Below are positions 12,149-45,629 of a stretch of 64,000 nucleotides of DNA, piece after piece. The number at the start of each line of letters is the position of its first letter. Position 1 is the first letter of the stretch. Source of the DNA: Octopus sinensis. Its lineage: Eukaryota. The notes beneath the pieces were generated by a model. That model was not told where the DNA came from. It did no database searches and saw only the letters and a list, made by a program, of their open reading frames with translations. The stretch lies in the NCBI RefSeq assembly GCF_006345805.1, contig NC_043002.1, forward strand, positions 78,120,001-78,184,000, given 5' to 3'. Both the position numbers and the translations under genes were made by a program.

Positions 12149-12253
12149 GTACAATACCACATGGACTTTGAGAAAAACAAGGACAAGTACACAGTTGTAG
12201 CAGACAACCCTGATATGCAACGGTGTTTGATGGCTACAAAGAATGCAAGTTTG
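12149..12253 (+). CDS. Lasp: Lasp internal exon, single nebulin repeat N1 (VQYHMDFEKNKDKYTVVADNPDMQRCLMATKNASL), 105 nt, phase 0-0
   Basis: ttccAG|GTACAA acceptor, TTG|GTATGA donor, 35 open codons. The YHxDFEK..K...VAD.P pattern matches the core exon at 45455 and nebulin repeats generally. Confidence 0.85.
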
Positions 12254-15200
12254 GTATGAGATGCCTACCTATCTGTTCTTGATGCCCCAAGTTATTGTTT
12301 TGCATGGTTTAGAGATTACTTACCATGGGAACAGACCAGTTCAGTTTTATCAAAGTGTGCATACTGTTTACATGCACAAAATAATGCTCTTTCTCTCTCT
12401 CTGTCTGTCTCTCTCTCATGTTCAGTCTCTCCCTCACACACACACACCATATACTGAAAATACAATTAATGAATGAGAAAACAAATTATCAAATGGACCT
12501 CTTTGAAATGTAAATTGGTTTTCAACAAATGACTCTATCCTAATGTCAGACATTTGTACAGTCTCTACTTAAGAAATTTGACAATGAAGTGGTTGCCTTT
12601 AACATCAACAGACCTTTTTGACAAATTTGCTTACTAATGGAAACAACAGCTATCTTCTTGCTGAAAACTTCCAAAACTAAATTTACTTTTTAAGTTGCTG
12701 ACATTACCATCCACTTCAGTCTCACTTTGTATACATAGGCTTTATTCAGATGTTTTTGATGGACCTTTCATGAACAACCATCTCCAAAGCATCTTACAAC
12801 TGGTGATACAACAATTTAGTTTTATTCAAACCTCCACACACTGTATATCTCATCCTTAATACAGAGGTTACTAGTGCCTCTAATTAGTTACTAGTGCCTC
12901 TTCTTCAAACATTAGATTCTGAGACACCTAGTAACAATCTCTGATTATCTTTATGAGAATATTTCTCCCTGTCTTTCATATTTGAGGTGATGAATCGGCA
13001 TAGGCTATAAAATTGGCAGTCATTTGAATGTTGGATACCTTGTGGTATTTTTTCTGATTCTGTGGGCTCTTAGTTCAAATCCCTCTTAGGTCAACTTTTC
13101 TTTAATCCTTTTGGAGTACCAATTCAAGATGACAAAGTGGTGGAACCATAAGACTGTTGGACAAGTTGCCTTGCCATATTTGTTCTGGCTTTTTGCATTC
13201 TGAGTTCAAAACCTGCCGTGGTCTACTTAGGTTGTAGACTTAACCCATTTCCAGTCTAACACCACCACCTGGAACCTTGGCTTTAGCAGAGTCTATTCTG
13301 TTGCAAAGGTTCAGGCTAGGTCTTTGGTTCGAAGATGCCTTCTATCTCCCCACCAGTCTTGGAGTCTATAAAGGACTGTGGGCATTGCCTTCTCTCCTGA
13401 CTGAAAAAAAACCCCAAAAAACAAAAAAAAAAAACAACTTTCTATGACTTTACAAAGTAAAGTTTTAAAACTATGCCCTTCATTCATGTATTATTCAGAC
13501 ATTGTAATAGGTGGAATGGACACACATGAACACACACACACACAACATCAGATATAAAGAAACAAAGCCAGTAAGCTTAATACTTTTTTTTTGCGGTGGG
13601 GGTGGAATTTAGTCGAGAAAAAGTCAGCACCCATGACTGGTAGGAGGAAGTTATCCTTGATTGGAGACCTGGGCTCAACACTTGCCAAGAATGTATGCTA
13701 AAGGCAGCTGGGAGCCAAGAAGTGATATTAAACTGGATGACAGATTAAGTTTATCACTCAACAGGAATGGTTTCTCCAGCAGGATTTCGCACAGTTTCCA
13801 TGTAGCAAATTTCATTTACAAAGCTTGTCCAAAACTACATAATTGCAAGTGAACTTCTTAACCCCACTGTTATGTCCACACACATTTCACTTCAAGGCTT
13901 TGGTTAGTATGGGGCTATTGTTCCCATTCTGAGTTGTGTTTTTTTGTTGTTTCTTAATATTTCTTTTACTATGGTTTCCATTCTGTTGAACACGTTGATT
14001 GCATATCAAGTTCACCCCAAACATATTCAGTGCACATGCTTCTGTTCTTTCTATGACCTACACTGTTTCTTTTCTCCTAGACCCTGTTACTAAACATTTT
14101 TCAGTTCTTTAGTGTTACTCTCTACCCCTCTGGAACCCCTTTTCCATTCACATATTCTATCCATGTACCCAACCTTGTTATCCTGGTTATGATTACTGCC
14201 ACACCACCTCACACTAATAAATTTAAAAAAAAAAAGAAGTTTTGGTTAATTTCAAAGGTAAAATATTATGATGATAGTTATTTAAAGCATTTCACAGAAG
14301 GTGTGACTGTAATAGAATGTTTTTTGTTAAAATATATCTGGAATGTTGATAACTAACAATATGGAATGCTACAATATAGTGTGGAATTACATCACTTAAA
14401 GGTTTGGTTTTTGTGTGAATTGCTGCACTTGCAAATTTAATATAAACATTCCAACCAATGCCAGCACGAAGAAAAAAATATATAAAAAATATAGTTTTTG
14501 TAAAGAATAGCGTTTTTTAATATACTGATTTTTAACTTCACCTTTGTTAAAGTAAGTTGAGTAGGTCTGTAAAATATATTTTATCAGTTCTTTGAAGCAA
14601 TACAGGAAAACTTTTATGTGGAAAGAAAACATAGAATTAGTTATCAACTGTCATTTAATGCCTAATGTAGTGCTAATGTCTGTTTTTCTTTTTTTCTCCT
14701 TTTTCTTAAGAAAATGTGTGAAATTATGAAAAATACTTTAGCTAAACCAGTAAAAAAAAAATTAAATAATAAAGAATAAGATTATATACTTAACAGTAAT
14801 GTATTTTATTAAATCTCTTGCCCATTTTTACCCAAAACTCTTGATCTTGCCCAAACTTATCTCTGTGACAAAAATATATTCTTATAAGTATGTGAAATCT
14901 TGTAAGAGATTTCTTTGTTTATTGAAGTCAATTCTTCCAATATCTTCAGCAGCCTTATTATGAGCATAACTATCTTTTATTATTGTTTTATCTTTCTTTT
15001 TATTTTATTAATACCGTTGAATTGTAAAAATCATTCAGTTATCTCCTTAACTAATTCTGTTAGAAAAGGGCTCAAATAATCTCTCATTTTAGATTTCTGT
15101 GTCCTACTTTTCTATCTTGCACAAATAGTTAGAAGTATATAATATTGACTTGTCCTATATTCCTTCTAATACTTTGTGAAACTCCATCAATATCAGACAG

Positions 15201-18200
15201 ACATGTGCATATTGCATAGGGGTGATGATATTGATGATGATGATGATAATGAAACATAGCTACCTGAATTGTATCAGGAAGAGAACTGACAAATTTATCC
15301 TCATCAGGAAATACATGGAAAGATTCCAAGGATCTGTAAATGCCGGCAATATCTCGTCAGAAATGTCTTATCAGCAATATTCTATGGAAAGCTTTGCACC
15401 GCATTTGAACTAGATTTAAACAGTCTTGCTTACCAATTAAAGATATCTTCTCTCTCCTTTATTTAGTACTTGTTTACTTTTTGCTTTTATATTGTTTATA
15501 TTTTATAACTTTTTTAGCTTCTGAATTTTATTTTCAAATGCAATTACCCATTGGTGCCTGCATTTTGATGGGAGGAGGAGACTCTCCTACTAATATTTTT
15601 TTTTTAACATTTACTTTGCTCAGTGGGTTGGCAACATTGATGGAATGTTAGATCGTAGGCTTTGTGATATTGAGATACATGCCTCTGTTCTGAATTGAAT
15701 TATCCCTTCATCTCTGAGGATGTTGTTGTTTAGCCCAAGATCAGTGCTGATCAAGCAGGCCTATCATCAAAGGCATTCCAGCTATAACCAGCTTGTCTTT
15801 TTTTTTTTTTCCTTCTTTTCAAGATAATATAGTCTGAGTGTACCTCAGACTATATTATCTAATGTTTCCTTTTTAAGATGATAGGGTGAAGCTTGACAGA
15901 TTTTGGCTGTTGTTTCAAGCAGGTTGAGTGACCATGTAGAGTTAATGCAATTGCTATTGTTTATGGTAACTATCAAGAAAAGAATGAATATTAAGGAGCT
16001 TTGAAATTCGTAACTTTTTTTTGCTTTTGTTTTTTGAATTTCATGGCCTAAAGATGATTACAGAGGAAATGTTTAGTGTTAATTAAAATCATGAATGGAT
16101 TATGCAGAAGTTATCACTTAGTCTTGATGTATGTCTGTAAAAACAGGTTTTACATTTGTAAATTTCTTTATACCTTATCGGCAATAAAAAGAAAGCCCTC
16201 ACATAATTTCATGATATATTTCTCTTTGAAAGGCTAAAATTTGCAATTTAATTTCTAGTTCTTAAACAAGTGTTGCTCTTCATTAACTCTAGGGGTTTCT
16301 TATATTGCTCCATATCTTATATCTTGTTAGCTATGGGCCACATTTGTAGTCAAATATAGCTTGATGCTTTTAAGTTGATCAAAACACATTTATTCACTTA
16401 ATAAGTTACTGCTTTTGTTTTACCCCTGGTCTACCCTAGTGAAGTTGCTCAGCTGTCGTTTTAGGGGCCTATAAGACTCATTTTAATGCAGTGTGTCCCT
16501 TCCTTTCCCAAGACCACTGAGTATGATTTGAAGGAGCTTTGGCTTCCTCATTCATTTCCTCATTGGCTCAAATGAATGAATGAATGAATGATTTCATTTG
16601 GGAAACAGATGTTAGCTTGATGATGACAGTGGTTAAAAATGTAGAACTTTCTAAGTTTCATTTGTTGTAATTGGTACAATATGTACAAACAGTCTATTTT
16701 AGAGTGTTTGTATGTTTTGTTTTCCAATTCCATATTTATATAACTTAGTTCTGAATTACTCTATTTCTGTTCCTTCTGGACCTGCATCAGATTTTCTAAA
16801 ATTTACTTCCTTTACAAAAAAAAAAAAAAAAGAAAAAAAGCAAAAAGAAAAAGAGACACTCACTCACTCACTCATTTAATGTCTGTCTTTCCATTTTAGC
16901 ATAGGTGTGAAAGGGAATATATTTGAATATTTGGGTTGGTTATGGTCAGTTTAAATGCGATAGGGTTAAACAAAAGTCAGTGTTACAATACAGGAATACT
17001 CATATTATGGAAGCATTGTTTCTGAAAATCTTGCCATGATGTAGAATTCCATAATACAAAACCTATTTTCCACTTGACTTGCAAAATGAAATCAGTGGGG
17101 AAATAAGTTATAGAATTCCATATTTTATTAAGATTTTCAACAACACAAATATAGGAGATATCTGAATTCAGATTGCTTGCTGGCTTTTTTATTTTTCTAT
17201 TTAATAACTAGGTCTTTTAGCTTCATAGTTGTCTCCCCCCCACACACACATCAAGTTATGTGTACATAGCCATTTCTGTGTGTTTGTTTGAGAAATCAGT
17301 TCTAAAAAGTTCTATTTCTTATGGGTAAAGAACTCAAAATGTATTATAGTTATGAATAAGTTTAGGGTTCTTTACTTTTCTTGAAATAGCCAGAATTATA
17401 TTCTCCATTCTCTTTTCTCGCACACACAAGCTCACAAATGCTTTTGCCTATTTGAAGGGATGGGTAGGCAGGTGGAGACAATGACAGACTTTCACATTAT
17501 GTCAAGAGGAAATAGCTGCCAGATTTTTGTTGACCTTATTAGATGTCATTGTGAACTCATTAGTAACTTTTGTTCTGCAGGATTTTGTAACTGGTTTCAT
17601 TTACATATGCCTTATGTAAAACTATTTCAACTAGATAACTGGTATTGTTTCAACCCTTCCTGCTAATTAAGCAGTTTCAGTACATGTATGCTGTCTGAAA
17701 CCTTGTGAAACAATGTTTTCTTTCTTTCTAAAATACACAAGCTTTCAATTTGAAACTTCAATTGGGTCATGTTCACGTTTTTGCTATTTCTTGTATAGAA
17801 GTAAAACTAGGTGATCTCTTCATTATTTTGCATTGAGTTAAGTTTACTTGGTGGTTATTTAGTTTTCCTTAACCATTTCACCAACAAACTATCATTTTAA
17901 CAGATTGTTATTCATGGAAGTAATGAGAACCAAGGCAATATAGTAAACCCTGCATAACTTGTAATGTGGTGTTAGGAAACTGAGTCTGTTCTAAAGAAAT
18001 TGGTGATTTATAGCAAATTTTTGCAATCTAACTTGTGGGACAAATATGTTGATATCTTTTAATTGAAAATGCTTTTTCTACAATTATTAAAAAGTATTTT
18101 AATGCTGACAACTTTCTGTCTTAAAACTGTTGTACCTTTATCTAGGAAAATAGAGATTTTTATATATTTTAGTAAAAAAGTATTCTTTGTTTTTGCCTTA

Positions 18201-18632
18201 AATTCATTTAAATAGTAAAAATGTGATGTCATATAACATTCACTATACTTTTAGTATGAGTTTCGACTGCTCTATTAATGACTAAGCATGCATTTCATTA
18301 AAAAAAAATTTTTTTTAGTTAATCTAAGAAATGCATTGTAAAAGTTTATGCATACATATGTGTGTGTCTGTAGAAGTGCAAGATTTCCATGACAAACAAA
18401 AATTAATCCTGAATAAATAATTTGTAAAATCATCGTGTGAAATTACAAGAAACTTAGCTGAAGCCTTCAGTTTGTTTGAAGAATAATTTTATTTACAAAT
18501 AATTGCATGGGGTGAGTAGGTGGGTGGTAGTGACATTAGTTTTACTCAGTTTTGGTTGCTGGTGTTGGGTTGGTTTAAGTGCAACTGATGTAATATAAAA
18601 AAAACTCAGTTAATAATTTGATTTATTCTTCA

Positions 18633-18853
18633 CCCTTTAGCATTTAAACTGGCCATATCTGACCCAAATAGTCTACCTATTTTATGTTCAAACTTGCCAG
18701 ATCAGTCTTCTCACACCTACCCTATAATGTCATTCTAAGAATAAGCACACACATCATCAGAATCTCAAAGCTACAAACATAATGCATGATTAATTCATAG
18801 CAATGTGAATACTTAAATCGTACATTTGACAGAGTAACCTGAAGGCTAAAGTG
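18633..18853. mobile_element. TTAA-associated piggyBac-like MITE (family 1)
   Basis: CCCTTTAGCATT ... GCTAAAGTG|TTAA termini, inverted homolog of 55267-55479. Confidence 0.65.
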
Positions 18854-19143
18854 TTAAATCACAGAACATTTAGCATGGTTTGTATGATTATGAATTCCAT
18901 AAAAGCTAATGTCATTATTAGGTTGGATTCTCAGAACTAAGCTATCAAACAGCTCATGAATTCTATTGTTCAGTTGGTTGATAGGCTCATTAAAATTTTA
19001 GCTGTAATCAGTCTGTTTATGTCAACTATGTAAAGTATAATTCTTTCCATTATAGGCACAATGCCTGAAATTTGTGGGTATGAAACTAGTCGATAACATC
19101 AACATCAGTGCTTAACTGGTATTATTTTATATTATTATTATAT

Positions 19144-19367
19144 AAGGCGGCAAGCTGGCAGAAACGTTAGCACACCGGGCGAAATGCTTAGCAGTATTTC
19201 GTCTGCCGCTACGTTGGGAGTTCAAATTCCGCCGAGGTCGACTTTACCTTTCATCCTTTCGGGGGCCGATTAAATAAGTACCAGTTACGCACTGGGGTCG
19301 ATGTAATCAACTTAATCCGTTTGTTTGTCCTCTCTGTGTTTAGTCCCTTGTGGGCAGTAAAGAAATA
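19144..19367 (+). mobile_element. tRNA-derived SINE (family B) nested in an older minus-strand copy (~19045-19445)
   Basis: B-box GAGTTCAAATTCC, central CCTTTCATCCTTTCGGGG..AAATAAGTACCAG. 13-bp direct repeat GGTATTATTTTAT at 19118-19130 and 19368-19380. Confidence 0.8.
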
Positions 19368-20141: not shown

Positions 20142-21359
20142 TTGGGTCATCCCATAAGTAATGCTTCTTTCATTTTCTACAATGCTTTTCCATCTATCTG
20201 GTAGACTTGTAAGGACCCTCTTCCAAAATTCACTTGTCTGTGATGAAAAATACTCCTCCAGTACTGTTCTGACCTTGTCTACAGAATAAATATTTTTTTC
20301 CGTTCAAATGATTTTGAAGACTGTGGAATAAATGATAATCAGATGGGGGCAATGTCTGGTGAATATGGTGGGTGGGGCATTGTTTCCCATCCAAACTGCT
20401 CCATCCTTTGGAATGTCATCCTCACTGTATGTGGCTGAGCATTATCCTGATGGAAGAACACCTTTCGTCTTGAAACCAGATATGGTCTCTTTTTTTCTAG
20501 CACTGACTTAAACTGTTCGAGCTGCTCACAGTAGATCTCCTTTGTTATTCCTTGGTTTGAGTTTAAGAGTTCAAAGTGGACTAAACCTTTCATATTCCAT
20601 CAAACAGATAACAACACCTTATGTGGGTGAAGCCCTTCTTTATCCTGGGGTGCTGGTGGTTTTTTCTTTCCCTAACCACTGTCTTTGGCACTTGACTTTT
20701 TTTTTATAGAGAACCCATTTCTCATCACCAGTTGCTATTCAGTTCAAAAAAGGTTCATTCATGAGACATGACAGCAAAGAAGAGCATGCATTCACACTCT
20801 GTGTGCGATTAGACTCAGAAAGTTTGTGAGGAACCCAATGACCCAATTTGCTGACTTTTCCGATGGCACGCAGTTGTTGACGAATGGTTGAATGACCAAA
20901 TCCAAGCTTCTCTGCTAGTTCCTCAACAGTTACGATTGGATTTTGTTATACCAAGGTTTGCAGGACATCCTCATCAAGCTCTATAGATCTTCCAGGATGA
21001 GGCTCATCTTCTAGGCTGTAGTTTCTGGCTCGGAATTTCTGAAGCCACTGTTGATACTGTCTTACACTTATTGTCCAATCTCCATATACTGCATTAATAT
21101 TCCTCACACTTTCTGTTGCATTGTTGCCTCTATTGAACTCATAAAGCAAAATATGCTGAACATGCTCCTTTGCCATTATAGCTTTGAAAAAATAACTGTT
21201 AAAATTGAACTACAGTCTTCAAAACTCGCACTAAAAATAAGTACAAGGTAAAATTACTACCTGTTTTTATAGCAAGTTGATGCAGGTAGTTTATCCCATC
21301 TCCATCTGACTTTTAATTCATGCAAATGAAAAAACTGCATTATTTATGGGATGACCCAA
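20142..21359 (-). mobile_element. Near full-length mariner (DD34D-type) transposon with an inactivated transposase
   Basis: TA TSDs and TIRs TTGGGTCATCCCATAA(G/A)TAATGC. Minus-strand motifs WVPHKL, TGDEKW, HQDNA and YSPDIAP, with stops and frameshifts (ORFs 20946..21176 and 20339..20593). Confidence 0.93.
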
Positions 21360-21549
21360 TATTTAACTGTATTTGTTAGTAACCTCAATATCTGCTGACT
21401 TCTTTTCAGCATTAAAATTTATTTTGTAAATGCCATGCTATATTTCAAAATGTCTAATTGCCACCACCACCACCAACTATAAGCACATTCAAGTCTTAGC
21501 CATATCTTTACAAAAGAAAATACAATGTGAATGTTTAACTTGAAGCATT

Positions 21550-21780
21550 AACACTTTTGTTACCATATTTCTATTAAAATACATTACGTTTGTTTCAATT
21601 AATTTTGAAAATAATGGAGAATTTAATGAAATAACTTCATTATTAAAATGGTGTTTGGAATATAAATTAACATGAAATTTTTATGGGAAGTTTTTTAAGT
21701 TAATTTTAAACAGAAAGTTTGTCTTACAGAACCAGTTGTGGTCTAGGCATGTCGGTATCAGAAAGGTTAAATCTTCAACA
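21550..21780. mobile_element. TTAA-flanked MITE related to family 2
   Basis: TTAACACTTTTGTTACC ... GGTATCAGAAAGGTTAA termini. Confidence 0.5.
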
Positions 21781-21901
21781 CTTAACAAAATAACTGCTGC
21801 AAACTTAGCTCAATCTCCTTAGACAAATAATGCTTTTCACAAAGTTTTAAAATTAACAGCATCAATTCTAAACATAGATATCAAGTTGTTTCCTAATTCT
21901 C

Positions 21902-28982: not shown

Positions 28983-29956
28983 CTTTGTAGTAAAGATTGT
29001 TTGCCAACATAACATGGCAGTCCAAGTTTAGGATGAATGTTGCTGTAATTTAGCCCCAGGAGACATCATCTCCAGCTGGTTATATGACGCGATCTGTGTC
29101 CTTATATTTTCAAACAAGGGAATCTAGCAGCCACCACTCAACTCAAAACAATATCTGCATATTGCGATTTCCTGGTTATTTCCCTTCATCAGCACAATAA
29201 CTCTTTGGCTAGAGGTGGCGCTGTCAAGTTCCCGTTTGAAATATATAGTTTTCAAAGTGACAACTAGTCACTGATCTATAAATTAGAAAATTACTACTTT
29301 TAAATCACACAACGTGAGAAATTCAGCTACAGTACTTTGTAGTAAAGATTATTTGCCAACATAGCATGGCAGTCCCGGTTTAGGACTAACGTTGCTGTAA
29401 TTTAGCCCCAGGAAACATTGTCTCCAGCTGGCTATATGACACAATCTGTGTCCTTATATTTTTGAACAAGGGAATCTAGCACCCTCACTCAGCTCAAAAC
29501 AATATCTGTGTATCGTTATTTCCCTTCATCAGCTAGAGGTGGCACTGCCAAATTCTCGTTCGAAATATATCTCACATTGTGAGATTTAAAAATAATAATT
29601 TTCTAATTTATAGATCAGTGACTAGTTGTCACTTTGGAAACTATATATTTTGAACGGGAATCTGGTAGCGCCACCTCTAGCCAAACAATTATTCTGTGCT
29701 GATGAAGGGAAATAACCTGGAAATCGCGATACACAGGTATTGTTTTGAGCTGAGTGGGGGTGCTAGATTCCCTTGTTCGAAAATATAAGGACACAGATCG
29801 TGTTGTATAGCCAGCTGGAGACGATGTCTCCTGAGGCTAAATTACAGCAACATCCATCTTAAACCAGGACTGCCATGTTATGTTGGCAAACAATCTTTAC
29901 TACAAAGTACTGTTGCCGAATATCTCACGTTGTGAGATTTAAAAATAGTAATTTTC
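28983..29956. repeat. Fold-back array of a ~352-bp unit (forward unit plus partial unit, then inverted unit plus partial unit)
   Basis: The unit start CTTTGTAGTAAAGATT recurs at 28983 and 29335. About 29568-29907 is the reverse complement of the unit. AATCAGTCTTTGT occurs at 28976-28988 and 29958-29970. Confidence 0.85.
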
Positions 29957-30664
29957 AAATCAGTCTTTGTTTTGATTTTTCTGTTTTCAATAACCATTTA
30001 CTTACTTAACATTGCAATTGTTTATAACTAATCAATTATTCTTTTAGTTTTGTTCCAAAGCATTTCCTTAATTTAAAATTTCTTCACTTGTAAATGTTTG
30101 CACATTTTGCAAAAAATAAGAAAAATGAACAAAACTGTTTGAACCTGTTATGTTTCCATTCTTGTTTCATGAGATTATATGTAAAAAAAAATATAAGCAA
30201 CAATGAAATAACAAAATGTTTGTTTAAATTTACTTAGTAAATTATTTGATAAGTAAATTTTCAAATAATTTACTTATCAAATTATTATGATGTAGTGATG
30301 TATACCTCACATCAAGATAGTGTTTATGTTTTGAGTGAAAAAATTGTTTTATATTAATATTTATAATTAAAATATTTTGAAAATTTTCTTTACTTCTGGG
30401 GACGTTCTAGCGTAATTTTACCTTGTATACATATATTTAACTTCAAAAATATAAAATAGTTTGTTTTTTTAAATATAATTCTTTGGCTTTCTTATTTTAT
30501 TTTATTTTAAATTGCTGTATTAGCAATTAATTATTTTTGGTGAATTTATAAGTTTATATTATTAAAGTTTTACACTTTCATCTTTACTACCAACAGTGTT
30601 ATGGTATGTGGTACTTTTTTCCTTTTTGGTTTTTGTACAGCTGCTTATATTTGTACTTGATTAG

Positions 30665-30769
30665 GTCAACTACCACAGTGACTTTGAAAAACAAAAGGGT
30701 TCTTACACTGCTGTAGCTGAACCTATTGAATTGAAACAACATTTGGAAAACACAAAGAACATGAGTTTG
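30665..30769 (+). CDS. Lasp: Lasp internal exon, nebulin repeat N2 (VNYHSDFEKQKGSYTAVAEPIELKQHLENTKNMSL), 105 nt, phase 0-0
   Basis: gattAG|GTCAAC acceptor, TTG|GTATAA donor, stop-free. Versus N3, 13 differing codons are synonymous and 5 non-synonymous. Confidence 0.85.
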
Positions 30770-31175: not shown

Positions 31176-31280
31176 GTAAACTACCACAGTGATTTTGAGA
31201 AACAGAAGGGTTCCTATACTGCTGTTGCAGAACCTATGGATGTAAAGCGACACTTGGAAAACACAAAAAACATCAGCCTG
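31176..31280 (+). CDS. Lasp: Lasp internal exon, nebulin repeat N3 (VNYHSDFEKQKGSYTAVAEPMDVKRHLENTKNISL), 105 nt, phase 0-0
   Basis: aacAG|GTAAAC acceptor, CTG|GTATAT donor, stop-free, paralogous to N2 and N4. Confidence 0.85.
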
Positions 31281-32230: not shown

Positions 32231-32335
32231 GTAAACTACCACAGTGATTTTGAGAAACAGAAAGGTTGCTATACAATGGTAGCAGAACCTATGGATATAA
32301 AACAACATTTGGAAAACACCAAAAATATCAGTCTG
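32231..32335 (+). CDS. Lasp: Lasp internal exon, nebulin repeat N4 (VNYHSDFEKQKGCYTMVAEPMDIKQHLENTKNISL), 105 nt, phase 0-0
   Basis: gatAG|GTAAAC acceptor, CTG|GTATAT donor. 31/35 aa identical to N3, with 8 synonymous and 4 non-synonymous codon differences. Confidence 0.85.
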
Positions 32336-35101: not shown

Positions 35102-35206
35102 ATTCAGTACCACAGTGACTTCGAAAAGCAGAAAGGTAACGTCACACCCGTTGCTGACACTTTGGAAATGAAGCGTCACACAGAAAATGCAAGGAACATT
35201 AGTTCG
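35102..35206 (+). CDS. Lasp: Lasp internal exon, nebulin repeat N5 (IQYHSDFEKQKGNVTPVADTLEMKRHTENARNISS), 105 nt, phase 0-0
   Basis: gacAG|ATT acceptor, TCG|GTACAA donor, stop-free nebulin-like module. Confidence 0.82.
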
Positions 35207-37060: not shown

Positions 37061-37168
37061 ATGCATTATCGAAGTGATTTTACTAAACTGAAAGGGACAG
37101 CCACTCAAGTGACTGTGGAGTCTCTTGAAATGAAAAGACATGCTGAAAATGCCAAGAACCTCAGTGCG
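37061..37168 (+). CDS. Lasp: Lasp internal exon, divergent nebulin repeat N6 (MHYRSDFTKLKGTATQVTVESLEMKRHAENAKNLSA), 108 nt, phase 0-0
   Basis: ttcacAG|ATG acceptor, GCG|GTACTA donor, 36 open codons, shares EMKRH.ENA.N.S with N5 and N7. Confidence 0.78.
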
Positions 37169-40011
37169 GTACTAACTCACTTAGTTTGGCTTGGTTGCTC
37201 CAGTTAGTCGCCTTTTTTTTTTTATCCCTACCTTTCTGGTTTATCAAGATGCTAAATATTGATTACTTAAATTAAATTGATTACTTGAATTAAATTATCT
37301 AGAAACTTGACTAATTTTTTAATACATTAGCTTTCCTTAAAAATACACTTGATTTCAAAATGAAAAAAAAAAAAAGAAAACTATTACAAACCTTTTCTTC
37401 AACAATAAATCTATTTTTGGCACAGTACTTTGAAATGTATCAGATAACGGAAACTGTACAGTTCTCTAGGGTTATTAACGAAATTAAGTTATTGGTAGAA
37501 TCTAAAGGTTTTCTGGGTCTCTATAGATTGCTGGTAAGATTGGCTGCACAGTTCATTGTTTACCGACTCTTTACAGATTGCTGGTAAGATTGACTGTATA
37601 ATTCATTGAAGCCCTTTCATTATCAGAATGGGTCAGTTAACTACTGTCATCTTTGATTGTTCACATGGTGAGGCTCTATCAAGAGATTCATAGTTCATTT
37701 CCATTTGAATGCATTTCTTCAATCTAACTATACTCATTTAGTGAAGACATGAATAAGTTTTCAAAGTCATTCATGTCCAGTACTAACTATTTTATCTTTT
37801 GAAGCATCAGTCATTTTTTCTAATTGAAAATGTTCCTCCTACTGAATATTTTTGTAGGATGTTTATGTGTGGATATATAACATTATAAAGGCTTTACAAA
37901 AGCATAGCCTTTACTTACAGTGTGGTGAGTTATAGGCAAGTAGGCCAGTTTGATGTAGGCAAGTTTGGATAAATAGCCATTTACATACATATTGATGAAA
38001 CCATAAACTCTCTTTAAAACAAGGAAAACATTGACGTAAGTGTTAAAAAAAGAAGGAACTGAAGTATCTGAATATTTTTAGTACTGATGTTAAACTTATC
38101 TTCTAACTGGAGTAAAGTAAATGTACCATTACTACAATTTCATTTACTAAGCTGATATCAGTGTAGCTTTGTTGCTATGGTATCAAGGGAGGCTGAACTG
38201 CTATAAAAATTTTGGAATTTCGAGAGAGATTGAGATGCTCTTAGTACAGTTCTTGTAATCATCTGATGAAGTATTTTTTGAGAAATAGCTTATCAGGACA
38301 AATTTTAAATGCTGTAGACTGAAAAAGATCAATTTGAATTTTATCAAGTAAATATCATTTGTAACATTTTTAAAAGGCTTTCACTTTATTACATACTATA
38401 TGGTGTTGTAGTAACTTAGTATCTCCTGAAATCTAGTGTATTTTTTCCCCTTTAAGCTCATTTTTCAAACATACCAAAGTTTTATGTGATAAAACGAATC
38501 TGCAGAAAACACATAGGTTGCCGTGTTAAAAAGATGTTTGAAATCTATTTTAGCATCAATTAGAAACTGCAGCAACTGAGCTGGACATCTATCCACCTAG
38601 AATCATGTTCTATTTGTAGAAATTGGTCTTAAAACAGCAGCTTCACATGTCTCAATGTTTAGTTTAACTTCTGTTTTTTGACTGGTTTAGCTTTTTTTCA
38701 AGCATTTGTTTTCACTTTTTAGTTTTATTTAGAGTACACATCCTTAATTTTAGCATTTGATGATTGGTATCATCTGGGAAAATAGGCAGACCGTAACATA
38801 TTTCATTGTTTCAAAAGTTATTACCCGCTGGTCTCAATTTAATGAGGTACATACAGTTACTAGAATGTTCAAAAATCTATCATCTGTACACAAATTGGCA
38901 GTATTAGAGTACCTTCCTACCATCTTGAATGCAGATACTTGAGTTTTGTTTAATTGCTAAATTAATAGCTGTTTGTTCTTTATTTTGTTGCTGTGTGAGC
39001 TTATACTAGAATTTAAACAAAAATTTTCCATCTCTTTTCTCAATCTCTGCATGACTGTGTTGTGCTGGGAAGCAAATTACATTTAAGTCCACTATCAAAC
39101 AATCAACTTGTTTCATAGAAGAGAACAGAATATAATGTGTAGTAGTAAATGATTTCAATCTGGGATAGAAGTTTGTTAATTTCCAGAGGATATTAGGAAT
39201 ATACATGAACTGTTAAATCAAAGCCTTCAAAAATTAGATCCATTCATCAGTAGTTAGTAATAATTTTTTTTATATTAGGCATTAAAATTCTAGAGGGGAG
39301 CAAGTGAACTATATTTCAAGGGCATTGGCTACATATTTGAAATGATTCCAAATAGAAATCCAATCTAGGATGTGCTCTTGATTCATCAAGTATCCTGTAT
39401 CACATTAAAATGGTCACCCCCACATAGAGAGTAGCTGTTTTCAACAACCACTAGTATTAGCAACAATAAATAACACCTGGAAAATTTTCAGGTAGAAAAA
39501 TTCCCATGGCTAAAGTGTTAAATGGTAAGTTGTTGTTGATTTGTTATCCCAGAGTTGCTTGATTCCTTAAATGTTTTAAAAGCTTTTGCAAACTTTGAAT
39601 GTTTGGTTGAAGTATTACCAGTGCTAGCAGAGATCTGCACTTATTTCCTTGCAGTTGCAAAACTCATGTCATTTGCACAATAACCAAACAAATGCACTAT
39701 TTATATTAAATTTCTTTATATAATTAAAATATTCTTGTATGAAAGTTTTCGTTACAAATATAAATATATTAATATATGTTTTTTAAAAATAAAAACTAAT
39801 TTTCTTTTTAAAAATTCCTCTTAAAGAATGTAATTTTAATGGATCAGAATTTCCTTATACAGAGTTTTACAATTTTTTATAAAATGAAAAATAAATACAA
39901 AAGCAAAAGTGCTCATTTAAAAAAAAAAAACCTTGTAATTTCAAAATTAAAATTGCCTAAATGTTTTGAATCTTGGGATAGGGTTAAAGTTAAATTTATT
40001 GACTTCTGCAG

Positions 40012-40119
40012 ATTCAGTATCACAGTGACTTTGAAAAGCAGAAAGGGTCTGCAGCGAAAATGACAGCAGATTCTATCGAGATGAAGAGACATCTGGAAAA
40101 TGCCAAGAATGCCAGCATG
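40012..40119 (+). CDS. Lasp: Lasp internal exon, nebulin repeat N7 (IQYHSDFEKQKGSAAKMTADSIEMKRHLENAKNASM), 108 nt, phase 0-0
   Basis: ttctgcAG|ATT acceptor, ATG|GTACTG donor, 36 open codons. Confidence 0.82.
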
Positions 40120-40774
40120 GTACTGAGTGTTGTCTTGCTCACTCAGCTTCATTACTGTCCATTCATCATCATTTCCATCTTAATTTAGCATACATACAAC
40201 AGGAGCTAAGTTTAGACTTCTAAATTCCCATCTAATTTTCAAATATAGTAATTTAGCCCTTCTCATTTTGAAGTTTGATGTTTTTTTCCCCCCTTTCAAA
40301 GTGTCTACTTGCATAATTTATTTTTATTTTAGGAATCATTTTCTTCAAAACTAACAGGGATTATCTAATAATTTTATGATCTTATTTAATGCTATTTGGA
40401 TTATTTTAAATCTTTTATAACTTGATTCTTAGGTTTATGATTTCATAAATTTGACCATGTGATTGAGAAGTTGTGACTTTGTAGTTGTGACCCCCTCCTC
40501 TCTCCGTTGTGTGATACTTTGAGCAAAGTATCTTCTACCATAACATTAAGTTGATCAAAACCATATGAAGTAAGTTTGGTAGTGAGAAACTGTGAAGCCT
40601 ACTAGGTTTCTGTGTGTGCATGTGAGATGGTCAAATTTAGTACATCAAATGAAAATACTTCACCATATTAGTTCCACCCTGTCAGGATCCACTTAGCTTA
40701 ATAGTACAGAGCACTCAGCTGTTATCTGAGAGGTGACAGGGTTTGATTCTCTATAGCCACCTGCTGGCAACTTT

Positions 40775-40985
40775 TTAAGGCACTGAGCTGGCAGAATTGT
40801 TAGTTGATCTGGCAAAATGCTTAGAAGTATTTTGGCTATTTTCACATTCTGAGTTTAAATTCTGTTGATGTCAGTTTTGCCTTTCATTCTTTCAGGGTTG
40901 ATAAAATAAGTACCAGTTGAGCACTAGGGTTGAGTAATTGACTATCTCCATCCCCTAAAACTTAAGGCCTTGTGCCTATAGTAAA
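40775..40985 (+). mobile_element. Degenerate family B SINE
   Basis: GAGCTGGCAGAA...GAGTTTAAATTCTG...GCCTTTCATTCTTTCAGGGTTGATAAAATAAGTACCAG. Confidence 0.7.
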
Positions 40986-42646
40986 AAGGAATATTAGTTG
41001 CTCTCAAGTTATGCCCCTTCATGCCAAGGTCAGTTTGTCTTTTGATTCTCTACAAGGTCACTAAAAATAAGCACCAGATAAAATATTAGAAACTAAAACT
41101 CTTGAAAGTGGTACCATAGTACAACTGCAGTTCAGTCACCAAAACTAATAAAAAAAAAATAAACAGCTCCTGTTGTTAGACTACATGTTCATTTTTTTTT
41201 TTTGTTTTAGTCATCATTCTTTTGTAAAAACTCTCTGAAAATTTTTGAAAAATTATAGCAATAAAAATGAAAGAAAAATAAGTTAGTGGGGAAAACAATT
41301 TCTTCTAGATTTCATTCCTTATTATATTATAGGACCAATAATGTATTGGAAAAGCTAAACTCAATGGCTGCAAACAGTGTCTGGTTTCATTTAAGATCAT
41401 TAGATTGTCACTAAGTATGTTTTAAGAGCTGAAACTGACATAACTGGAGTCAGTTATGACCGTAAGGTCAGCATTTCCATGACATAACTGATGAGGTTTT
41501 CTACTTAAGTGAAACCTTTTGATAGGAGAGAGTGGGAGAGAGAGAGAGAATCTTATATTATGCAACTGATAATATCTCTCCAAGTGATAATAATACACAT
41601 CAGACACATATGTATACAGGTATAGTGCTAATATCCAAGTATTTTGTATATTTCTGGAAAAGGAGAGTAGGTGGGAGACGGTTAGGTATCTACCAATAAT
41701 AGCACAGTTGATGAGAAATATTGTTTTTTTTTTTTCTTCTTTGTTCCTTAGTGGCAGTTCATATCTTGTTTATTTTATGTACATATTTACTCTGAGTGGG
41801 CCAATCCATCAATTTGCCATTTTTGTACTGGAAAGAAGATCATACTTCAAGATATATATATAATTTGCAGACACAACCAGTTGAAAGATCTGCATGTTAG
41901 ATATTGGTAGCACTTTGTATATGATATGATATGGTGTCTTGCTTTGTTTTTAAAATTCAGGCTTCCCTTTTTAAATAGTATTTTAAATAATTACCCTCTT
42001 GTTATTTTTGTTCCTTATTAAGATGGTTTTGTTTCCTTTACTGTGAAACAGTATGTGGCTTTGACTCCAAAGAGTTAATCCTATTTTAACTATTTCATTT
42101 GATTAATCTCTGTGAATTAAATAGACAAGTATTTATTTTAATGTTCAGATTTAGAAGCATTATCTTTGTTCAATTTAAAATCGCTTTAGACTATATTTAA
42201 TTTAATTTAATTAATATCTATTTCAAAAGAATTACATTTTCTATTAAGATGAAGTCATTTTAAGAAAACCATCACAGATTTTTGATGAAGAGTATCTTGA
42301 TTGCCATTTATGTATTGTGGTTGGTGGGGGATATTTCCCAGTTCTCATTAAAAATCTGTTGGGTATCGTCTACATGTAAGCCAGTCAGCTATATATCTCC
42401 AGTGTTTATATACTTTTCTTATTTATGTATCTCAAATTATAACCATAGTTTTTAAGAATAACTGGATTATTGTTCTATTCTCTCATTTCAAAAAGCTTAT
42501 TAGTAGTTTTAGGAACTTGGAAGTGTTAAATTAATTACTTGTTTCAGTATGGGATTAAGCCTTTTGATACCATATTTCTGTTGAGATGCTCTGTGTTTCT
42601 TTCAATAAATTTTAAATATAACAAAGAATTTAGTAAAATAACTTAG

Positions 42647-42780
42647 TTATTAAGCTAGTGTTAGGAACATAAATTGGGACTAAAGTTTGGTGGAAGATTT
42701 TAATTCAAAACTTTTGAAAACAAGACATTTGTACTACAGAACCAGAGGCAGTTTCAGGCGGGTTGTTATAGAAGGGTTAA
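42647..42780 (-). mobile_element. TTAA-end MITE fragment (family 2), inverted relative to the 25546 copy
   Basis: Reverse complement shares CTGAAACTGCCTCTGGTTCTGTAGTACAAATGTCTTGTTTTCAAAAGTTTTGAATTAAAAT with the 25546 copy. Confidence 0.7.
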
Positions 42781-44872
42781 TTTCAGAAACCACATTGCTT
42801 CTCCGCCACCAAATAATTAATTGAATGCTGGTGTTGTTTAGATAAGCTCTTGTATGTTGTAAGTCCAAATCCTATCTGGGTTGATTTTTACCCGACACTC
42901 TTCTAAGGGCAGTCAAATAAAAATTCATTTGATTAAATTTAAAGACACCTTCAAATTTGGGGTTTGTGCTAATGTTAGAAGTGAATGTTATTGGTTTAGA
43001 TGGAGGGAAAAGGGTGTCATTCAAGACCATTGCAGAACCTGTCCTGGCCTGCTGGGGTTGACATGGGTAAGTTTTGGTTTGAATTTCTGTTATTTGGAGA
43101 TATCGAGTGAAGGATTTTTAGGTATGAGACAGTAGGGATGATAAGAAGTGAAAAGGCATCTACTTGAGGTAGATTTGAGTAGTGGTAATATCGAGAATGT
43201 TAGCTCAGAGAAGTAGAGGTTATTGTAGTAGTAGATAGTTAGTTATCTCTGTGCCATGAAGTTGCACCAAAATCTCGCTAACCAGCTCTGTTTTCTGCCA
43301 TTGTTCTGGTCTCATTCCAGCTTCTTCACCCTGCTTGTCTCCTTTCTTTGTCAGTGGTCCTTTGCCATGTGGTTTTAGGGCACTCTGTTGCTCTTTTCCC
43401 CACAGGATGTCACTTTGGTGCCACGATGCAATCACTTTCTTTATCTTGTCTGAGGACATGTCTAACCTAGTTCTAGTGTATGTGTGATAGGTAAACAGTT
43501 CTAGTTTATTGCCAGTCAATCAGATTACCTTTAAGGTGGGGTATGACCCTGCATATGTTGTAGCATCATCATCTTGCAGATAGGAGCAATGAGTCTTTGC
43601 TAATCTGCCAACTACTGGATATCAGTATGTGTATGTATGTTTGATAGTAAATTGTATTTTTCCCTCATTATTGAAATATTTCTGTATTTATAGTGGCTCA
43701 ATTCTTGAATCCTACTGATTTTTATTTATAAAGGTGCTTAATTACTTAATGTTTGAGTTTGGAGTCTGTAGCAAGGCTAAGCTTATGACTTTGTGCTCAT
43801 TTGGCACTCAGATTATTCAATCCAACCATTTGTGATGTACAAATAACTCTAGACTCTAAAGCTACCATAAAAACAACAGCATACAAACAAACCATTATTG
43901 GTACAAGACTTTAACAATAAATAAAAATCAAGAACGTTTTCATGGATATCTAATTTGTCCAATATCAAGGTAAAATGGAAAATACACAGCTGGTGGTATT
44001 ATAAACTAAAAACTCGGTAAAGATTCTAAATAATGCAATTTCTAATCTTATCAGAAAAGAATGACATAGCAGTTACTATTTTTATATATCTTAATTTCTT
44101 GAGAGCTGGGATTTTATTTTTGTGGCTGAATTTTTGCAGATGGGAAATCAAAGTGCAAATTCAAGCCGATTCAATTTTCCATTAAAAATGTTAGAAGAAA
44201 GTAAACTTGTGTTTGTGGTTAGTTGAATATGATATATGGTAACAGATTTTATTGAAATAAATTGTGGCATCTTAGATAATTGGTCTTCTGGTTTATATTA
44301 AGTTTAAAACTTGAATTTGTAATGAGTTAATTTTTGTTGGTTGTTTTTTCTTATGGTTATTATTAATATTTATTGACAGTATCTGATTACTAGAGAAGTG
44401 TAAAATGGGGTTTTAGAACCAAATACATGCATTAGCTTTACTTAATTCAGTTCATTTTTTGTAATATATTTATTGGAATTAGATTCAAGTGTTGTTAATT
44501 AGTCTTTGGTCAGCTCTGATTAAGTAGAACTACAATCAAAAATATTCCAACTGTGACTTGTGTATGTGTATAAATATATATATATTTATCTCCAGAACTA
44601 CATTGTTCCATGTGTCCTATTTTTGATATTCTAGGGTGATATTTAAGGGAATTTAGCTGTTATTACTTGCAGATTGAATGACTCGTAGTGCTTACCTCAT
44701 TGGCTCATAGATTCTAGTGTAGAGACATTTTATATTTTGTTTTCATAATGTAATAAACATTTTTGTTACAGGTATTCCTGAAGAACTCTGTAGTTAAAAT
44801 AATTCTTTTAATGACTCTGCCTATCTGTATATCTCATTGCAAATCCTGTCTGTTTTATTTGATACTCCACTT

Positions 44873-45025
44873 AGCCATGGCTTAGACAGAGGCATTGCTG
44901 TGTGGCTAAGAGTGGGTTCTGTCTCACTCTGCAACATCTTGGGGTGGTGCCTTCTTCAATTGCCTTGGGCTGGTCAATGTCTTGTGAGTGAATTTCACTG
45001 ATGAAAACTGTATTGATTCCATTGT
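44873..45025 (+). mobile_element. 5' part of a degenerate family A SINE
   Basis: Homology to the head and CTTGGG segment of the 8001 copy, ending in (TG)n(AG)n. Confidence 0.6.
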
Positions 45026-45454
45026 GTGTGTGTGTGTGTGAGAGAGAGCGAGAGAGAGAGAGAGAGAGAGAATGTTGATATTTGTTAAGCATATGAGCAA
45101 AGCAGTGTTGATATTGACATTTCTTGTTGACACTATTATCGATTACTCTATGCTTTTAAAGACTTGTGGAGTATAAAAATCCCTTACCCAAAAAATAGGT
45201 GAGGGTTGGTAACAGGAAGAGCATCTGGTTGTAAAATCCTGTGTTAAGATCGAGTCGTGTCAAGGTCATGTTAGCATGGAAAAATGGACACTAAAATTGA
45301 ACAAGCCATGTAATCAGTTTAAATCTTTATTACAGGTATTCCTGAACTTTCATAGCTGAAGTAACTCACTCTATCACCAATTCTGCCCATCTACATAGCT
45401 TTATTGTAAACCATATTCTGTATTTTATTGAGTTCTTCCTTATTTACCTTTCAG

Positions 45455-45629
45455 ATTAAATATCATGAAGATTTTGAGAAACAGAAAGGAAAACTCATCA
45501 CCATTGCTGATGATCCAGAATTGCAACGCATCAAGCAGAATACTCAGATTCAGAGTGAGATCAGCTATAAGGGTATCAAACAAACCCGGGATTTTATGGA
45601 ACAACGACGACCAGATCAAGCTGCTCAGG
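45455..45629 (+). CDS. Lasp: Lasp core nebulin-repeat exon (IKYHEDFEKQKGKLITIADDPELQRIKQNTQIQSEISYKGIKQTRDFMEQRRPDQAAQ), 175 nt, phase 0-1
   Basis: Strong polypyrimidine tract, tttcAG|ATT acceptor, CAGG|GTAACA donor. Closely resembles, from recall, the KYHxDFEK..KGK...VADDPE..RIKQNT..SxxxY segment of invertebrate Lasp. Lies within ORF 45428..45679. Confidence 0.92.

What the first reader, a model, noticed from the sequence alone, without database searches (positions are those of the whole stretch)
12149..45629. Lasp carries a hidden array of seven one-repeat-per-exon nebulin modules, a possible splice-tunable actin-binding ruler
Seen in sequence: seven phase-0 exons of 105/108 nt, each exactly one nebulin module, sit upstream of the conserved Lasp core exon. 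The ORF track largely misses them. Each exon ends in S-x and the next starts V/I/M-x-Y, so the actin-binding SxxxY motif is rebuilt across any junction and any subset stays in frame. Their donors (GTATGA, GTATAA, GTATAT x2, GTACAA, GTACTA, GTACTG) and mostly A-containing acceptors are weaker than those of the flanking core exons. Established knowledge: canonical Lasp has about two nebulin repeats, many-repeat proteins (nebulette, nebulin) are best known from chordates, and nebulin super-repeats have seven modules. Inference: this locus can switch between a short Lasp and a nebulette-like protein with 9 or more repeats, apparently by independent exon duplication in a mollusc. The count of seven may be coincidence, and more exons may lie upstream of the window.
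Basis: partly seen in the sequence, partly recalled or inferred. Interest (0 to 1): 0.88.

Follow-up and report, generated by a model that had tools for sequence, protein, structure and literature searches.

The report
Octopus Lasp nebulin-repeat cassette exons
The seven small exons are real, alternatively used pieces of the octopus Lasp gene that each add one actin-binding nebulin repeat, but they are already in the public gene annotation and molluscs in general have such arrays, so this is a modest, under-studied gene feature and not a hidden or octopus-only one.

Summary
Seven phase-0 exons of 105 or 108 nt each encode one nebulin module. They lie between the last LIM exon, 1.6 kb upstream of the window, and the conserved Lasp core exon at 45455-45629. 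No further nebulin exon exists anywhere in the 2.72-Gb genome.

- The window is Octopus sinensis chromosome DNA, and RefSeq already models at least 28 Lasp isoforms that together use all seven exons. The array is therefore not hidden.
- Models in O. vulgaris, O. bimaculoides and Argonauta, plus spliced transcript contigs from other cephalopods, carry different subsets, from none to six.
- The same design of 105-nt cassettes, the same intron position and weak donors occurs in a mussel and a scallop (three cassettes each). Oyster proteins carry four cassettes and abalone eight.
- A repeat tree shows an ancestral mollusc array. E1 is shared with gastropods and E5-E7 are cephalopod-wide.
- E2-E4 are an old octopus triplication kept under purifying selection.
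- The array is independent of chordate nebulette.
- The count of seven is a coincidence, because there is no super-repeat signature.
- Tissue-specific tuning and any ruler function remain untested.

The parts
12149..12253 (+). Cassette exon E1 (105 nt, phase 0-0): VQYHMDFEKNKDKYTVVADNPDMQRCLMATKNASL
   Evidence: AG|..|GTATGA. Pfam Nebulin 22.2 bits. Present in RefSeq X1 and most other isoforms, skipped in X8. Groups with the first cassette of Haliotis, Gigantopelta and another cephalopod, support 91/88.
30665..30769 (+). Cassette exon E2 (105 nt): VNYHSDFEKQKGSYTAVAEPIELKQHLENTKNMSL
   Evidence: AG|..|GTATAA. Belongs to the E2-E4 paralogue clade, support 99/93. pN/pS against E3 and E4 is 0.08-0.12.
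31176..31280 (+). Cassette exon E3 (105 nt): VNYHSDFEKQKGSYTAVAEPMDVKRHLENTKNISL
   Evidence: AG|..|GTATAT. 87% nt identity to E4, and the similarity fades about 15-20 nt into the introns. Skipped in an O. vulgaris model.
32231..32335 (+). Cassette exon E4 (105 nt): VNYHSDFEKQKGCYTMVAEPMDIKQHLENTKNISL
   Evidence: AG|..|GTATAT. Skipped in RefSeq X9 and X20.
35102..35206 (+). Cassette exon E5 (105 nt): IQYHSDFEKQKGNVTPVADTLEMKRHTENARNISS
   Evidence: AG|..|GTACAA. Pfam 23.1 bits. An orthologue-like cassette occurs in the spliced contig L012.
37061..37168 (+). Cassette exon E6 (108 nt): MHYRSDFTKLKGTATQVTVESLEMKRHAENAKNLSA
   Evidence: AG|..|GTACTA. Used only in RefSeq X28, together with E7. 34/36 residues identical to the Argonauta cassette, clade support 100/94. 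Joined to E4-E5 in an O. bimaculoides model.
40012..40119 (+). Cassette exon E7 (108 nt): IQYHSDFEKQKGSAAKMTADSIEMKRHLENAKNASM
   Evidence: AG|..|GTACTG. Pfam 23.9 bits. Skipped in X10 and X20; the only cassette in one O. vulgaris model.
45455..45629 (+). Constitutive Lasp core exon (phase 0 to phase 1): end of repeat 1, repeat 2 and start of the linker
   Evidence: Strong acceptor (88% pyrimidine) and GTAACA donor. Pfam Nebulin 38.9 bits. Present in every model. Falls in the 'core' clade with human LASP/NEBL and other phyla.
51055..51255 (+). Linker cassette exon (201 nt, phase 1-1), DGLPPPPP...IGQ
   Evidence: Mapped from RefSeq isoforms. Present or absent among models.
54169..54204 (+). Linker cassette exon (36 nt), VDKSKNTSAAKT
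   Evidence: variable among models.
55797..55844 (+). Linker cassette exon (48 nt), VEKVAKGKESSKSSKK
   Evidence: variable among models.
56504..56515 (+). 12-nt linker micro-exon, VRST
   Evidence: The only AG|TTCGATCTACAG|GT match in the interval. Variable among models.

Best explanation
The seven exons are alternatively spliced cassette exons of the single Lasp gene of Octopus sinensis. The gene's coding exons run from C6:78,028,696 to 78,194,543.

Shown:
- The constitutive frame is three LIM exons, the core exon and an SH3 exon. This frame gives a canonical Lasp with 2 nebulin repeats.
- Every exon boundary falls at the same point of the nebulin module, between S-x and x-x-Y, in phase 0. 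Each included cassette therefore adds exactly one 35-36-residue module and rebuilds the S-x-x-x-Y motif.
- Models contain from n = 0 to n = 6 cassettes, and Pfam counts n+2 repeats in them.
- Cassette donors are non-consensus (GTAT.. or GTAC..), while the constitutive LIM exons have GTAAGT.
- The array is ancestral to molluscs and grew by tandem exon duplication in separate lineages. Octopus E2-E4 and abalone c2-c4 are independent triplications. E5-E7 are cephalopod-wide. E1 is shared with gastropods.

Inferred:
- In vertebrate nebulin each module contacts one actin subunit, at about 5.5 nm spacing. By analogy, the isoforms would span about 2 to 8-9 subunits (roughly 11-50 nm) of F-actin between a LIM head and an SH3 tail.
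- Splicing would then set the avidity and reach of Lasp on thin filaments, dense bodies or Z-structures in different cell types.
- A second variable region, the phase-1 linker cassettes, separately sets the distance from the repeats to the SH3 domain.
For: Gene and exon structure:
- Exon anatomy and splice sites.
- Pfam finds 8 repeats in the joined exons, 8 in RefSeq X1, 4 in X28 and 2 in the short O. vulgaris model.
- LIM and SH3 exons were found in the flanking genome, and the LIM-end exon closes in phase 0 with ...QSS.
- Only this locus in the genome has nebulin exons.

Variable inclusion:
- 25 retrieved RefSeq isoforms (of at least 28), 8 O. vulgaris models, 1 O. bimaculoides model and 1 Argonauta model show ten different cassette subsets.
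- Intronless transcript contigs from other cephalopod-like samples carry either three cassettes, like E5, E6 and E7, or one cassette, like E1.
- Short cephalopod-like proteins in the database carry no cassette.

Comparison with other molluscs:
- Mussel and scallop genomic loci each have three 105-nt phase-0 cassettes with non-consensus donors, placed behind a GTAAGT LIM-end exon.
- Abalone has 8 cassettes and oysters have 4.
- Repeat trees.

Selection:
- Among E2-E4, pN/pS is 0.08-0.14 while pS is 0.45-0.78, and similarity is lost about 20 nt into the introns.

Literature:
- Nebulin repeats have 5.5-nm spacing and 1:1 actin binding (PMC7109182, PMC9140763).
- Two-repeat Drosophila Lasp controls thin-filament length and I-band architecture (PMC4137052).
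Against: - I could not inspect any read-level or long-read data. RefSeq isoforms are computed models, and their exon combinations may be partly combinatorial.
- 20 of the 25 O. sinensis models seen share one cassette set (E1-E5 plus E7) and differ only in the linker. The long form may therefore be nearly constitutive in the sampled tissues.
- No model joins all seven cassettes.
- Actin binding by these modules, the number of subunits they span, and any tissue specificity are inferred by analogy with vertebrate nebulin and Drosophila Lasp. None of this is measured.
Confidence: 0.75

Rival explanations
1. The cassette exons are in effect constitutive. The 8-repeat form is the working octopus Lasp, and the shorter forms are splicing noise or annotation artefacts with no regulatory meaning.
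For: 20 of 25 O. sinensis RefSeq models carry the same E1-E5 plus E7 set and vary only in the linker. The O. bimaculoides X1 model has the same set.
Against: - O. vulgaris models include four forms with no cassette and one with E7 only.
- RefSeq X28 and Argonauta X8 both use E6 plus E7 only.
- Independent spliced contigs from other cephalopods carry 0, 1 or 3 cassettes.
- Weak donors on cassettes, set against GTAAGT on constitutive exons, are conserved from octopus to bivalves.
Confidence: 0.2
2. The array is an orthologue of the chordate nebulette/nebulin repeat array, inherited from a many-repeat bilaterian ancestor and not gained independently.
For: It has the same module length and the same S-x-x-x-Y junction logic. 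RefSeq names some isoforms 'Nebulette' or 'nebulin-like'.
Against: - Human nebulette-specific repeats score 23.6 bits or less against the mollusc cassette profile, whereas mollusc cassettes score 25-79 bits, most above 45. They also form a separate group in the tree.
- Vertebrate nebulette exons lie after lasp-2 exon 4, which is downstream of the core-equivalent exon (bioRxiv 10.64898/2026.10.05.756842). The mollusc cassettes lie upstream of the core exon.
- Arthropod Lasp proteins align only over the LIM domain plus 2 repeats (33-34% query coverage).
- The extra repeats of annelid and nemertean Lasp are mostly core-type.
- A tree of 35 columns is weak evidence.
Confidence: 0.04
3. One or more copies, such as E6 or one of the E2-E4 triplet, are decaying duplicate exons that are no longer used.
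For: E6 has the weakest Pfam score (14.7 bits) and appears in only one of the 25 RefSeq models retrieved.
Against: - All seven keep an open frame and AG/GT borders.
- E6 is 34/36 identical to the Argonauta cassette.
- E2-E4 have pN/pS of 0.08-0.14 with nearly saturated synonymous sites, so each copy has stayed under purifying selection for a long time.
- Each exon occurs in at least one public model.
Confidence: 0.05

Closest known systems
Lasp genes of other molluscs (RefSeq models: Haliotis rufescens 'nebulin-like' 773 aa; Gigantopelta; oysters; Mytilus; Pecten, Argopecten and Ylistrum)
   Same: All have LIM, nebulin cassettes, core and SH3. Cassettes are exactly 105 nt, phase 0, at the same intron position, with weak donors, as verified in mussel and scallop DNA. 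Many isoforms are modelled. E1 is orthologous to gastropod cassette 1.
   Different: The cassette number differs: 3 in mussels, scallops and Gigantopelta, 4 in oysters, 8 in abalone and 7 here. E2-E4 and E5-E7 are expansions specific to cephalopods or octopods.
Vertebrate nebulin, alternatively spliced simple repeats M176-M182 (NEB exons 166-177)
   Same: In both, in-frame cassette exons encoding nebulin simple repeats are spliced in different combinations. In nebulin this has been suggested to tune a structural dimension, Z-disc width (PMC7109182).
   Different: Nebulin is a giant protein of 179-239 repeats without a LIM domain, with seven-module super-repeats. Here there are at most 9 repeats, a LIM head and no super-repeat.
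Vertebrate LASP2/NEBL locus (LIM-nebulette and nebulette)
   Same: One locus yields a short LIM-nebulin-SH3 protein and a many-repeat protein by alternative exon use (PMC3305314).
   Different: Nebulette uses its own 5' exons, lacks the LIM domain and has over 20 repeats. Its exons are inserted downstream of the core-equivalent exon. The octopus long form keeps the LIM domain, and its cassettes lie upstream of the core exon.
Drosophila Lasp
   Same: It is the sole nebulin-family gene of its genome, has LIM, 2 repeats and SH3, and has isoforms that differ in the linker (PMC4137052). Octopus also varies its linker through cassette exons.
   Different: The fly has a fixed number of two repeats. 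The octopus varies the repeat number from 2 to 8, possibly 9.
NRAP
   Same: An N-terminal LIM domain followed by many nebulin repeats (one search hits).
   Different: NRAP lacks the SH3 domain, has super-repeats and is confined to vertebrates.

Membership tests
Lasp (LIM and SH3 protein) family | N-terminal LIM domain | tested here: met
   LIM exons lie at C6:78028696, 78097277 and 78118330. Pfam LIM E 3e-12 on RefSeq X1.
Lasp (LIM and SH3 protein) family | C-terminal SH3 domain in the same transcript | tested here: met
   The SH3 exon is at C6:78194364-78194543. Pfam SH3_1 E 4e-13. The joining of SH3 to the rest rests on public models.
Lasp (LIM and SH3 protein) family | Two canonical nebulin repeats formed by the LIM-end exon plus the core exon | tested here: met
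   The short O. vulgaris model, whose sequence matches the window exons exactly, has 2 Pfam Nebulin repeats. The core exon groups with human and other phyla cores.
Nebulin repeat (Pfam PF00880) | Match to the 28-position profile above 20.1 bits | tested here: met
   Joined exons give 8 stretches, 169.7 bits, E 4.9e-51. Alone, E1, E5 and E7 pass, while E2, E3, E4 (18.7-19.9 bits) and E6 (14.7 bits) fall just short, because the model spans the exon junction.
Alternatively spliced cassette exon | Symmetric phase and a length divisible by 3 | tested here: met
   105 or 108 nt, phase 0-0.
Alternatively spliced cassette exon | Transcripts both with and without the exon | tested here: inconclusive
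   Ten cassette subsets occur among public gene models of four octopod species. Spliced contigs of other cephalopods have 0, 1 or 3 cassettes. No octopus reads could be examined here.
Nebulette / nebulin proper | Seven-module super-repeats with a conserved once-per-seven motif (WLKGIGW type) | tested here: not met
   The seven cassettes contain no tryptophan (sequence). They fall into clades E1, E2-4 and E5-7 and show no 7-fold register. Relatives have 3, 4 or 8 cassettes.
Nebulette / nebulin proper | No LIM domain and more than 20 repeats | tested here: not met
   The LIM domain is retained in all full-length long models seen, and the maximum is 8 repeats.
Nebulette / nebulin proper | Repeats orthologous to the chordate nebulette-specific repeats | tested here: not met
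   Human nebulette-specific repeats score low on the cassette profile and form a separate group. The insertion site differs. The tree has only 35 columns, so support is limited.
Molecular ruler | Repeat number sets a measurable filament or Z-structure dimension | not testable with these tools
   This needs imaging and genetics. Only the analogy to nebulin and fly Lasp is available (PMC7109182, PMC4137052).

The most novel reading that the evidence does not exclude
Mollusc Lasp is a convergent, splice-tunable counterpart of nebulette. Different muscle and non-muscle cell types would choose defined cassette sets (for example E6+E7 versus E1-E5+E7), possibly through Rbfox-type sites just downstream of E1, E3 and E4. 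That choice would set how many actin subunits Lasp clamps and so shape thin-filament anchoring in obliquely striated and smooth mollusc muscle, which has no nebulin. Independent re-expansion in octopus (7 cassettes) and abalone (8) would then mark selection for longer clamps.
Probability: 0.25. Interest if true: 0.6.

Novelty: new member of a known kind. Interest (0 to 1): 0.35.

Why it matters
Papers on muscle that I could read describe invertebrate Lasp as a fixed LIM, two-repeat, SH3 protein (PMC4137052, PMC3305314, PMC9140763). The mollusc loci show that a lineage without nebulin has built, and repeatedly enlarged, a one-module-per-exon array that can give 2 to 8-9 repeats. I found no paper describing this, although the isoforms sit in RefSeq. 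If inclusion proves to be tissue-specific, it offers a small natural system for asking how nebulin-repeat number affects actin binding and filament architecture, and a clear case of convergent exon-duplication evolution with chordate nebulette. As a genome-scan finding it is modest: the exons are annotated, the protein family is known, and the function is inferred only by analogy.

Tried and rejected
- The Pfam Nebulin model run over the whole genome found only the core exon, because single cassettes split the model. A protein query of joined cassettes was needed. An alignment query is not accepted for this genome.
The only nebulin-like hits in 2.72 Gb are the eight in the window.
- Look-up of the oyster isoform P0010 found no locus, because only the longest product of a gene is indexed. 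Mussel and scallop loci were used instead.
- A search for octopus transcript-derived fragments spanning E4-E7 returned only gene models and no read-derived contigs. Direct octopus RNA evidence therefore could not be obtained.
- Six literature searches found no paper on mollusc Lasp repeat arrays. Fujita et al. 2021/2022 on LASP evolution, cited in the 2026 preprint, is not held and could not be checked.
- The seven-equals-super-repeat idea is rejected (see the membership test).
- TGCATG enrichment downstream of the cassettes is weak: 3 sites, P about 0.03, and two of them sit in duplicated flanks. I keep it only as a lead.
- Structure prediction was not run. Isolated nebulin modules are not expected to give an informative model.
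Full report
**What is there**

Stop-to-stop ORFs in the region show seven short nebulin-like frames upstream of a longer one. Exact mapping gives seven + strand exons:
- E1 12149-12253
- E2 30665-30769
- E3 31176-31280
- E4 32231-32335
- E5 35102-35206
- E6 37061-37168
- E7 40012-40119

Five are 105 nt and two are 108 nt. Each is preceded by AG and followed by GT, and each begins and ends in phase 0. The conserved core exon is 45455-45629 and ends in phase 1.

Joined together, the exons give eight Pfam Nebulin repeats at E 4.9e-51. Single exons score 14.7-23.9 bits against a cut-off of 20.1, because the Pfam model straddles the exon junction. A profile built from mollusc cassettes finds these seven exons plus the core in the window, at E 1e-23 to 2e-15, and nothing else.

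**The gene around it**

The window is C6:78,120,001-78,184,000 of a 2.72-Gb genome. The contig length, 120,472,873, is that reported for Octopus sinensis proteins.

Neither the LIM nor the SH3 domain lies in the window. A whole-genome search places them as follows:
- LIM exons at C6:78,028,696-78,028,764, 78,097,277-78,097,371 and 78,118,330-78,118,414
- the SH3 exon at 78,194,364-78,194,543

The third LIM exon ends in phase 0 with ...NTKIQSS and has a GTAAGT donor. It can therefore join either E1-E7 or the core exon directly. Joined to the core it gives the canonical two-repeat Lasp.

Each junction is (S-x | [VIM]-x-Y), which rebuilds the nebulin S-x-x-x-Y motif whatever subset is used. It follows simply from every unit having its intron at the same place.

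A whole-genome search with joined cassettes finds only the eight exons of this locus. There are no further exons upstream, and Lasp appears to be the sole nebulin-family gene in this genome.

The linker between the core and SH3 is also made of cassette exons, all phase 1-1:
- inside the window: 51055-51255, 54169-54204, 55797-55844 and a 12-nt micro-exon at 56504-56515
- beyond the window: one further cassette of 114 nt

**Not hidden**

A protein search returns O. sinensis RefSeq entries named 'LIM and SH3 domain protein F42H10.3' or 'LIM zinc-binding domain-containing Nebulette', isoforms X1-X28. Their sequences contain the window's exons letter for letter.

Among the 25 isoforms retrieved:
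- 20 use E1-E5 plus E7
- X8 skips E1
- X9 skips E4
- X10 skips E7
- X20 uses E1, E2, E3 and E5
- X28 uses only E6 plus E7

O. vulgaris models include four with no cassette, one with E7 only, one with E5 plus E7, and two with five cassettes. O. bimaculoides X1 has E1-E5 plus E7. An older O. bimaculoides model joins E4-E5-E6. Argonauta X8 has orthologues of E6 plus E7.

Pfam counts 8, 4 and 2 repeats in X1, X28 and the short form, which is n+2 for n cassettes. No model joins all seven, so the largest documented form has 8 repeats and not '9 or more'.

These are computed models, and I could not inspect reads. There is, however, independent transcript evidence from other cephalopod-like samples:
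- Contig L012 (1,339 nt, intronless, run SRR9970006) encodes LIM, three cassettes like E5, E6 and E7, core and SH3.
- Contig L013 (1,103 nt, from a JGI sample) encodes LIM, one E1-like cassette, core and SH3.
- Further short cephalopod-like proteins carry no cassette.

**Splice signals**

The three LIM exons have GTAAGT donors. The seven cassettes have GTAT.. or GTAC.., matching only 3-4 of the 6 intron positions. Their pyrimidine tracts are poorer, 47-71% against 88-94% for the core and the third LIM exon. The linker cassettes also have weak donors (GTTGGT, GTTCGT, GTACCA). The sample is small but consistent, and the pattern recurs in bivalves.

**Not octopus-specific**

- Mussel locus L010 (assembly GCA_011752425.2) has three cassettes of exactly 105 nt between the LIM-end exon and the core.
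- Scallop locus L011 (Ylistrum balloti) has the same arrangement.
- In both, the intron position and phase match octopus. The LIM-end exon has GTAAGT, and the cassettes have non-consensus donors.
- Oyster proteins carry four cassettes, Gigantopelta three and Aplysia one.
- Haliotis rufescens 'nebulin-like' (773 aa) has LIM, eight cassettes, core and SH3.
- Arthropod Lasp proteins align only over the LIM domain plus two repeats.
- A nemertean and an annelid have one or two extra repeats, mostly of the core type.

**Repeat history**

Trees of the 35-residue modules are poorly resolved overall but give some well-supported groups:
- Core repeats of all phyla, including human, group together.
- Mollusc cassettes fall outside that core group.
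- E1 groups with another cephalopod's cassette and with cassette 1 of Haliotis and Gigantopelta (91/88).
- E2-E4 form an octopus clade (99/93).
- Haliotis c2-c4 form their own triplication (100/96).
- E6 and E7 pair with the Argonauta cassettes (100/94 and 99/94).
- E5-E7 sit with the three cassettes of the other cephalopod.

E2-E4 are 79-87% identical in DNA, and the similarity disappears about 15-20 nt into the introns. Between them, pS is 0.45-0.78 and pN is 0.06-0.09, so pN/pS is 0.08-0.14. The duplications are therefore old, and each copy has stayed under purifying selection.

**Relation to chordate nebulette**

Human nebulette-specific repeats score 23.6 bits or less against the mollusc cassette profile. 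Octopus, mussel and scallop cassettes score 62-79 bits, and abalone cassettes 25-61. The nebulette repeats also form a separate group in the tree.

According to the 2026 preprint from the Terasaki group, nebulette exons lie after lasp-2 exon 4, and the first four exons encode the LIM domain, repeat 1 and most of repeat 2. That places them downstream of the core-equivalent exon, whereas the mollusc cassettes lie upstream of it. Independent origin is the better reading.

The number seven has no link to super-repeats. The cassettes contain no tryptophan and so cannot hold a WLKGIGW-type motif. They fall into three age classes. Relatives have 3, 4 or 8 cassettes.

**Mechanism**

Shown: an in-frame array of cassettes that adds one module each, weak donors, and varied subsets in models and transcripts.

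Inferred from established knowledge:
- Each nebulin simple repeat binds one actin subunit at about 5.5 nm spacing (PMC7109182, PMC9140763).
- Two-repeat fly Lasp already affects thin-filament length and I-band architecture (PMC4137052).
- Isoforms with 2 to 8-9 repeats would therefore differ in avidity and in the length of filament covered, roughly 11-50 nm, between the LIM and SH3 ends.

The closest described analogue is the alternative splicing of nebulin simple repeats M176-M182 (NEB exons 166-177), suggested to tune Z-disc width (PMC7109182). Whether octopus tissues really choose different sets, and whether that changes any dimension, is untested.

**Literature**

Six searches found no description of mollusc Lasp arrays. 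The papers I could read give invertebrate Lasp two repeats. One relevant paper, Fujita et al. 2021/2022, is not held.

**Verdict**

However, it is annotated, shared across molluscs and exceeded by abalone, so the claims of 'hidden' and 'octopus innovation' fail. What remains is an under-described, independently evolved, probably splice-regulated nebulin-repeat array in a known gene family. It is of moderate interest.

Noticed in passing
window 20230-21209 (- strand): A degenerate mariner/Mos1-like transposase, broken across frames, lies inside the 18.4-kb E1-E2 intron. HTH_48 scores E 9.9e-18 and Transposase_1 scores E 1.5e-9.
   Followed up: partly
window 28983-29523 and 29567-29960: A large inverted repeat, in several segments 88-92% complementary, would form a long intronic hairpin about 0.7 kb upstream of E2. 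It could matter for RNA editing or splicing in an octopus, but this is untested.
   Followed up: partly
window 51055-51255, 54169-54204, 55797-55844, 56504-56515: The Lasp linker is built from phase-1 cassette exons, including a 12-nt micro-exon (VRST). Most of the 28 RefSeq isoforms differ here rather than in the nebulin array.
   Followed up: yes
window 12301, 31297, 32352 (TGCATG); 35232 (GCATG): Rbfox-type (U)GCAUG motifs lie just downstream of cassette donors, at +48 of E1, +17 of E3 and E4, and +25 of E5. The window density is 0.34 per kb and P is about 0.03. The E3 and E4 sites are in duplicated flanks, so they are not independent.
   Followed up: partly
window 38754-38942 (+): An O. 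bimaculoides 2015 gene model (A0A0L8HPL4) joins E4-E5-E6 to this open frame (tag|CAT...TGA) in the E6-E7 intron. That would give a truncated form without core or SH3. It is only about 82% identical between the two species, against 97-100% for the cassettes, so it is probably not a conserved coding exon.
   Followed up: partly
window 60775-61571 (+): Two adjacent ORFs resemble reverse transcriptase (an FADD motif). This is probably a LINE remnant in the linker intron.
   Followed up: no
P0144 (Haliotis rufescens, 773 aa): Abalone Lasp has eight cassettes, with its own triplication (c2-c4) that parallels octopus E2-E4. The same array has therefore been expanded repeatedly and independently.
   Followed up: yes
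L011 34527-34631 (Ylistrum balloti): The scallop genome holds a first cassette (VQYHSDFERSRGTYTQVPDTVDMKRLLLNTQNLSS) that is missing from its annotated protein P0059. Single-model annotations therefore under-report these arrays.
   Followed up: yes
P0216 (749 aa, unnamed metaclust protein): An N-terminally cut protein of unknown origin has about 12 nebulin-like repeats, a Lasp-type core repeat and an SH3 domain. Many-repeat nebulin-family proteins may exist in further non-vertebrate lineages.
   Followed up: no
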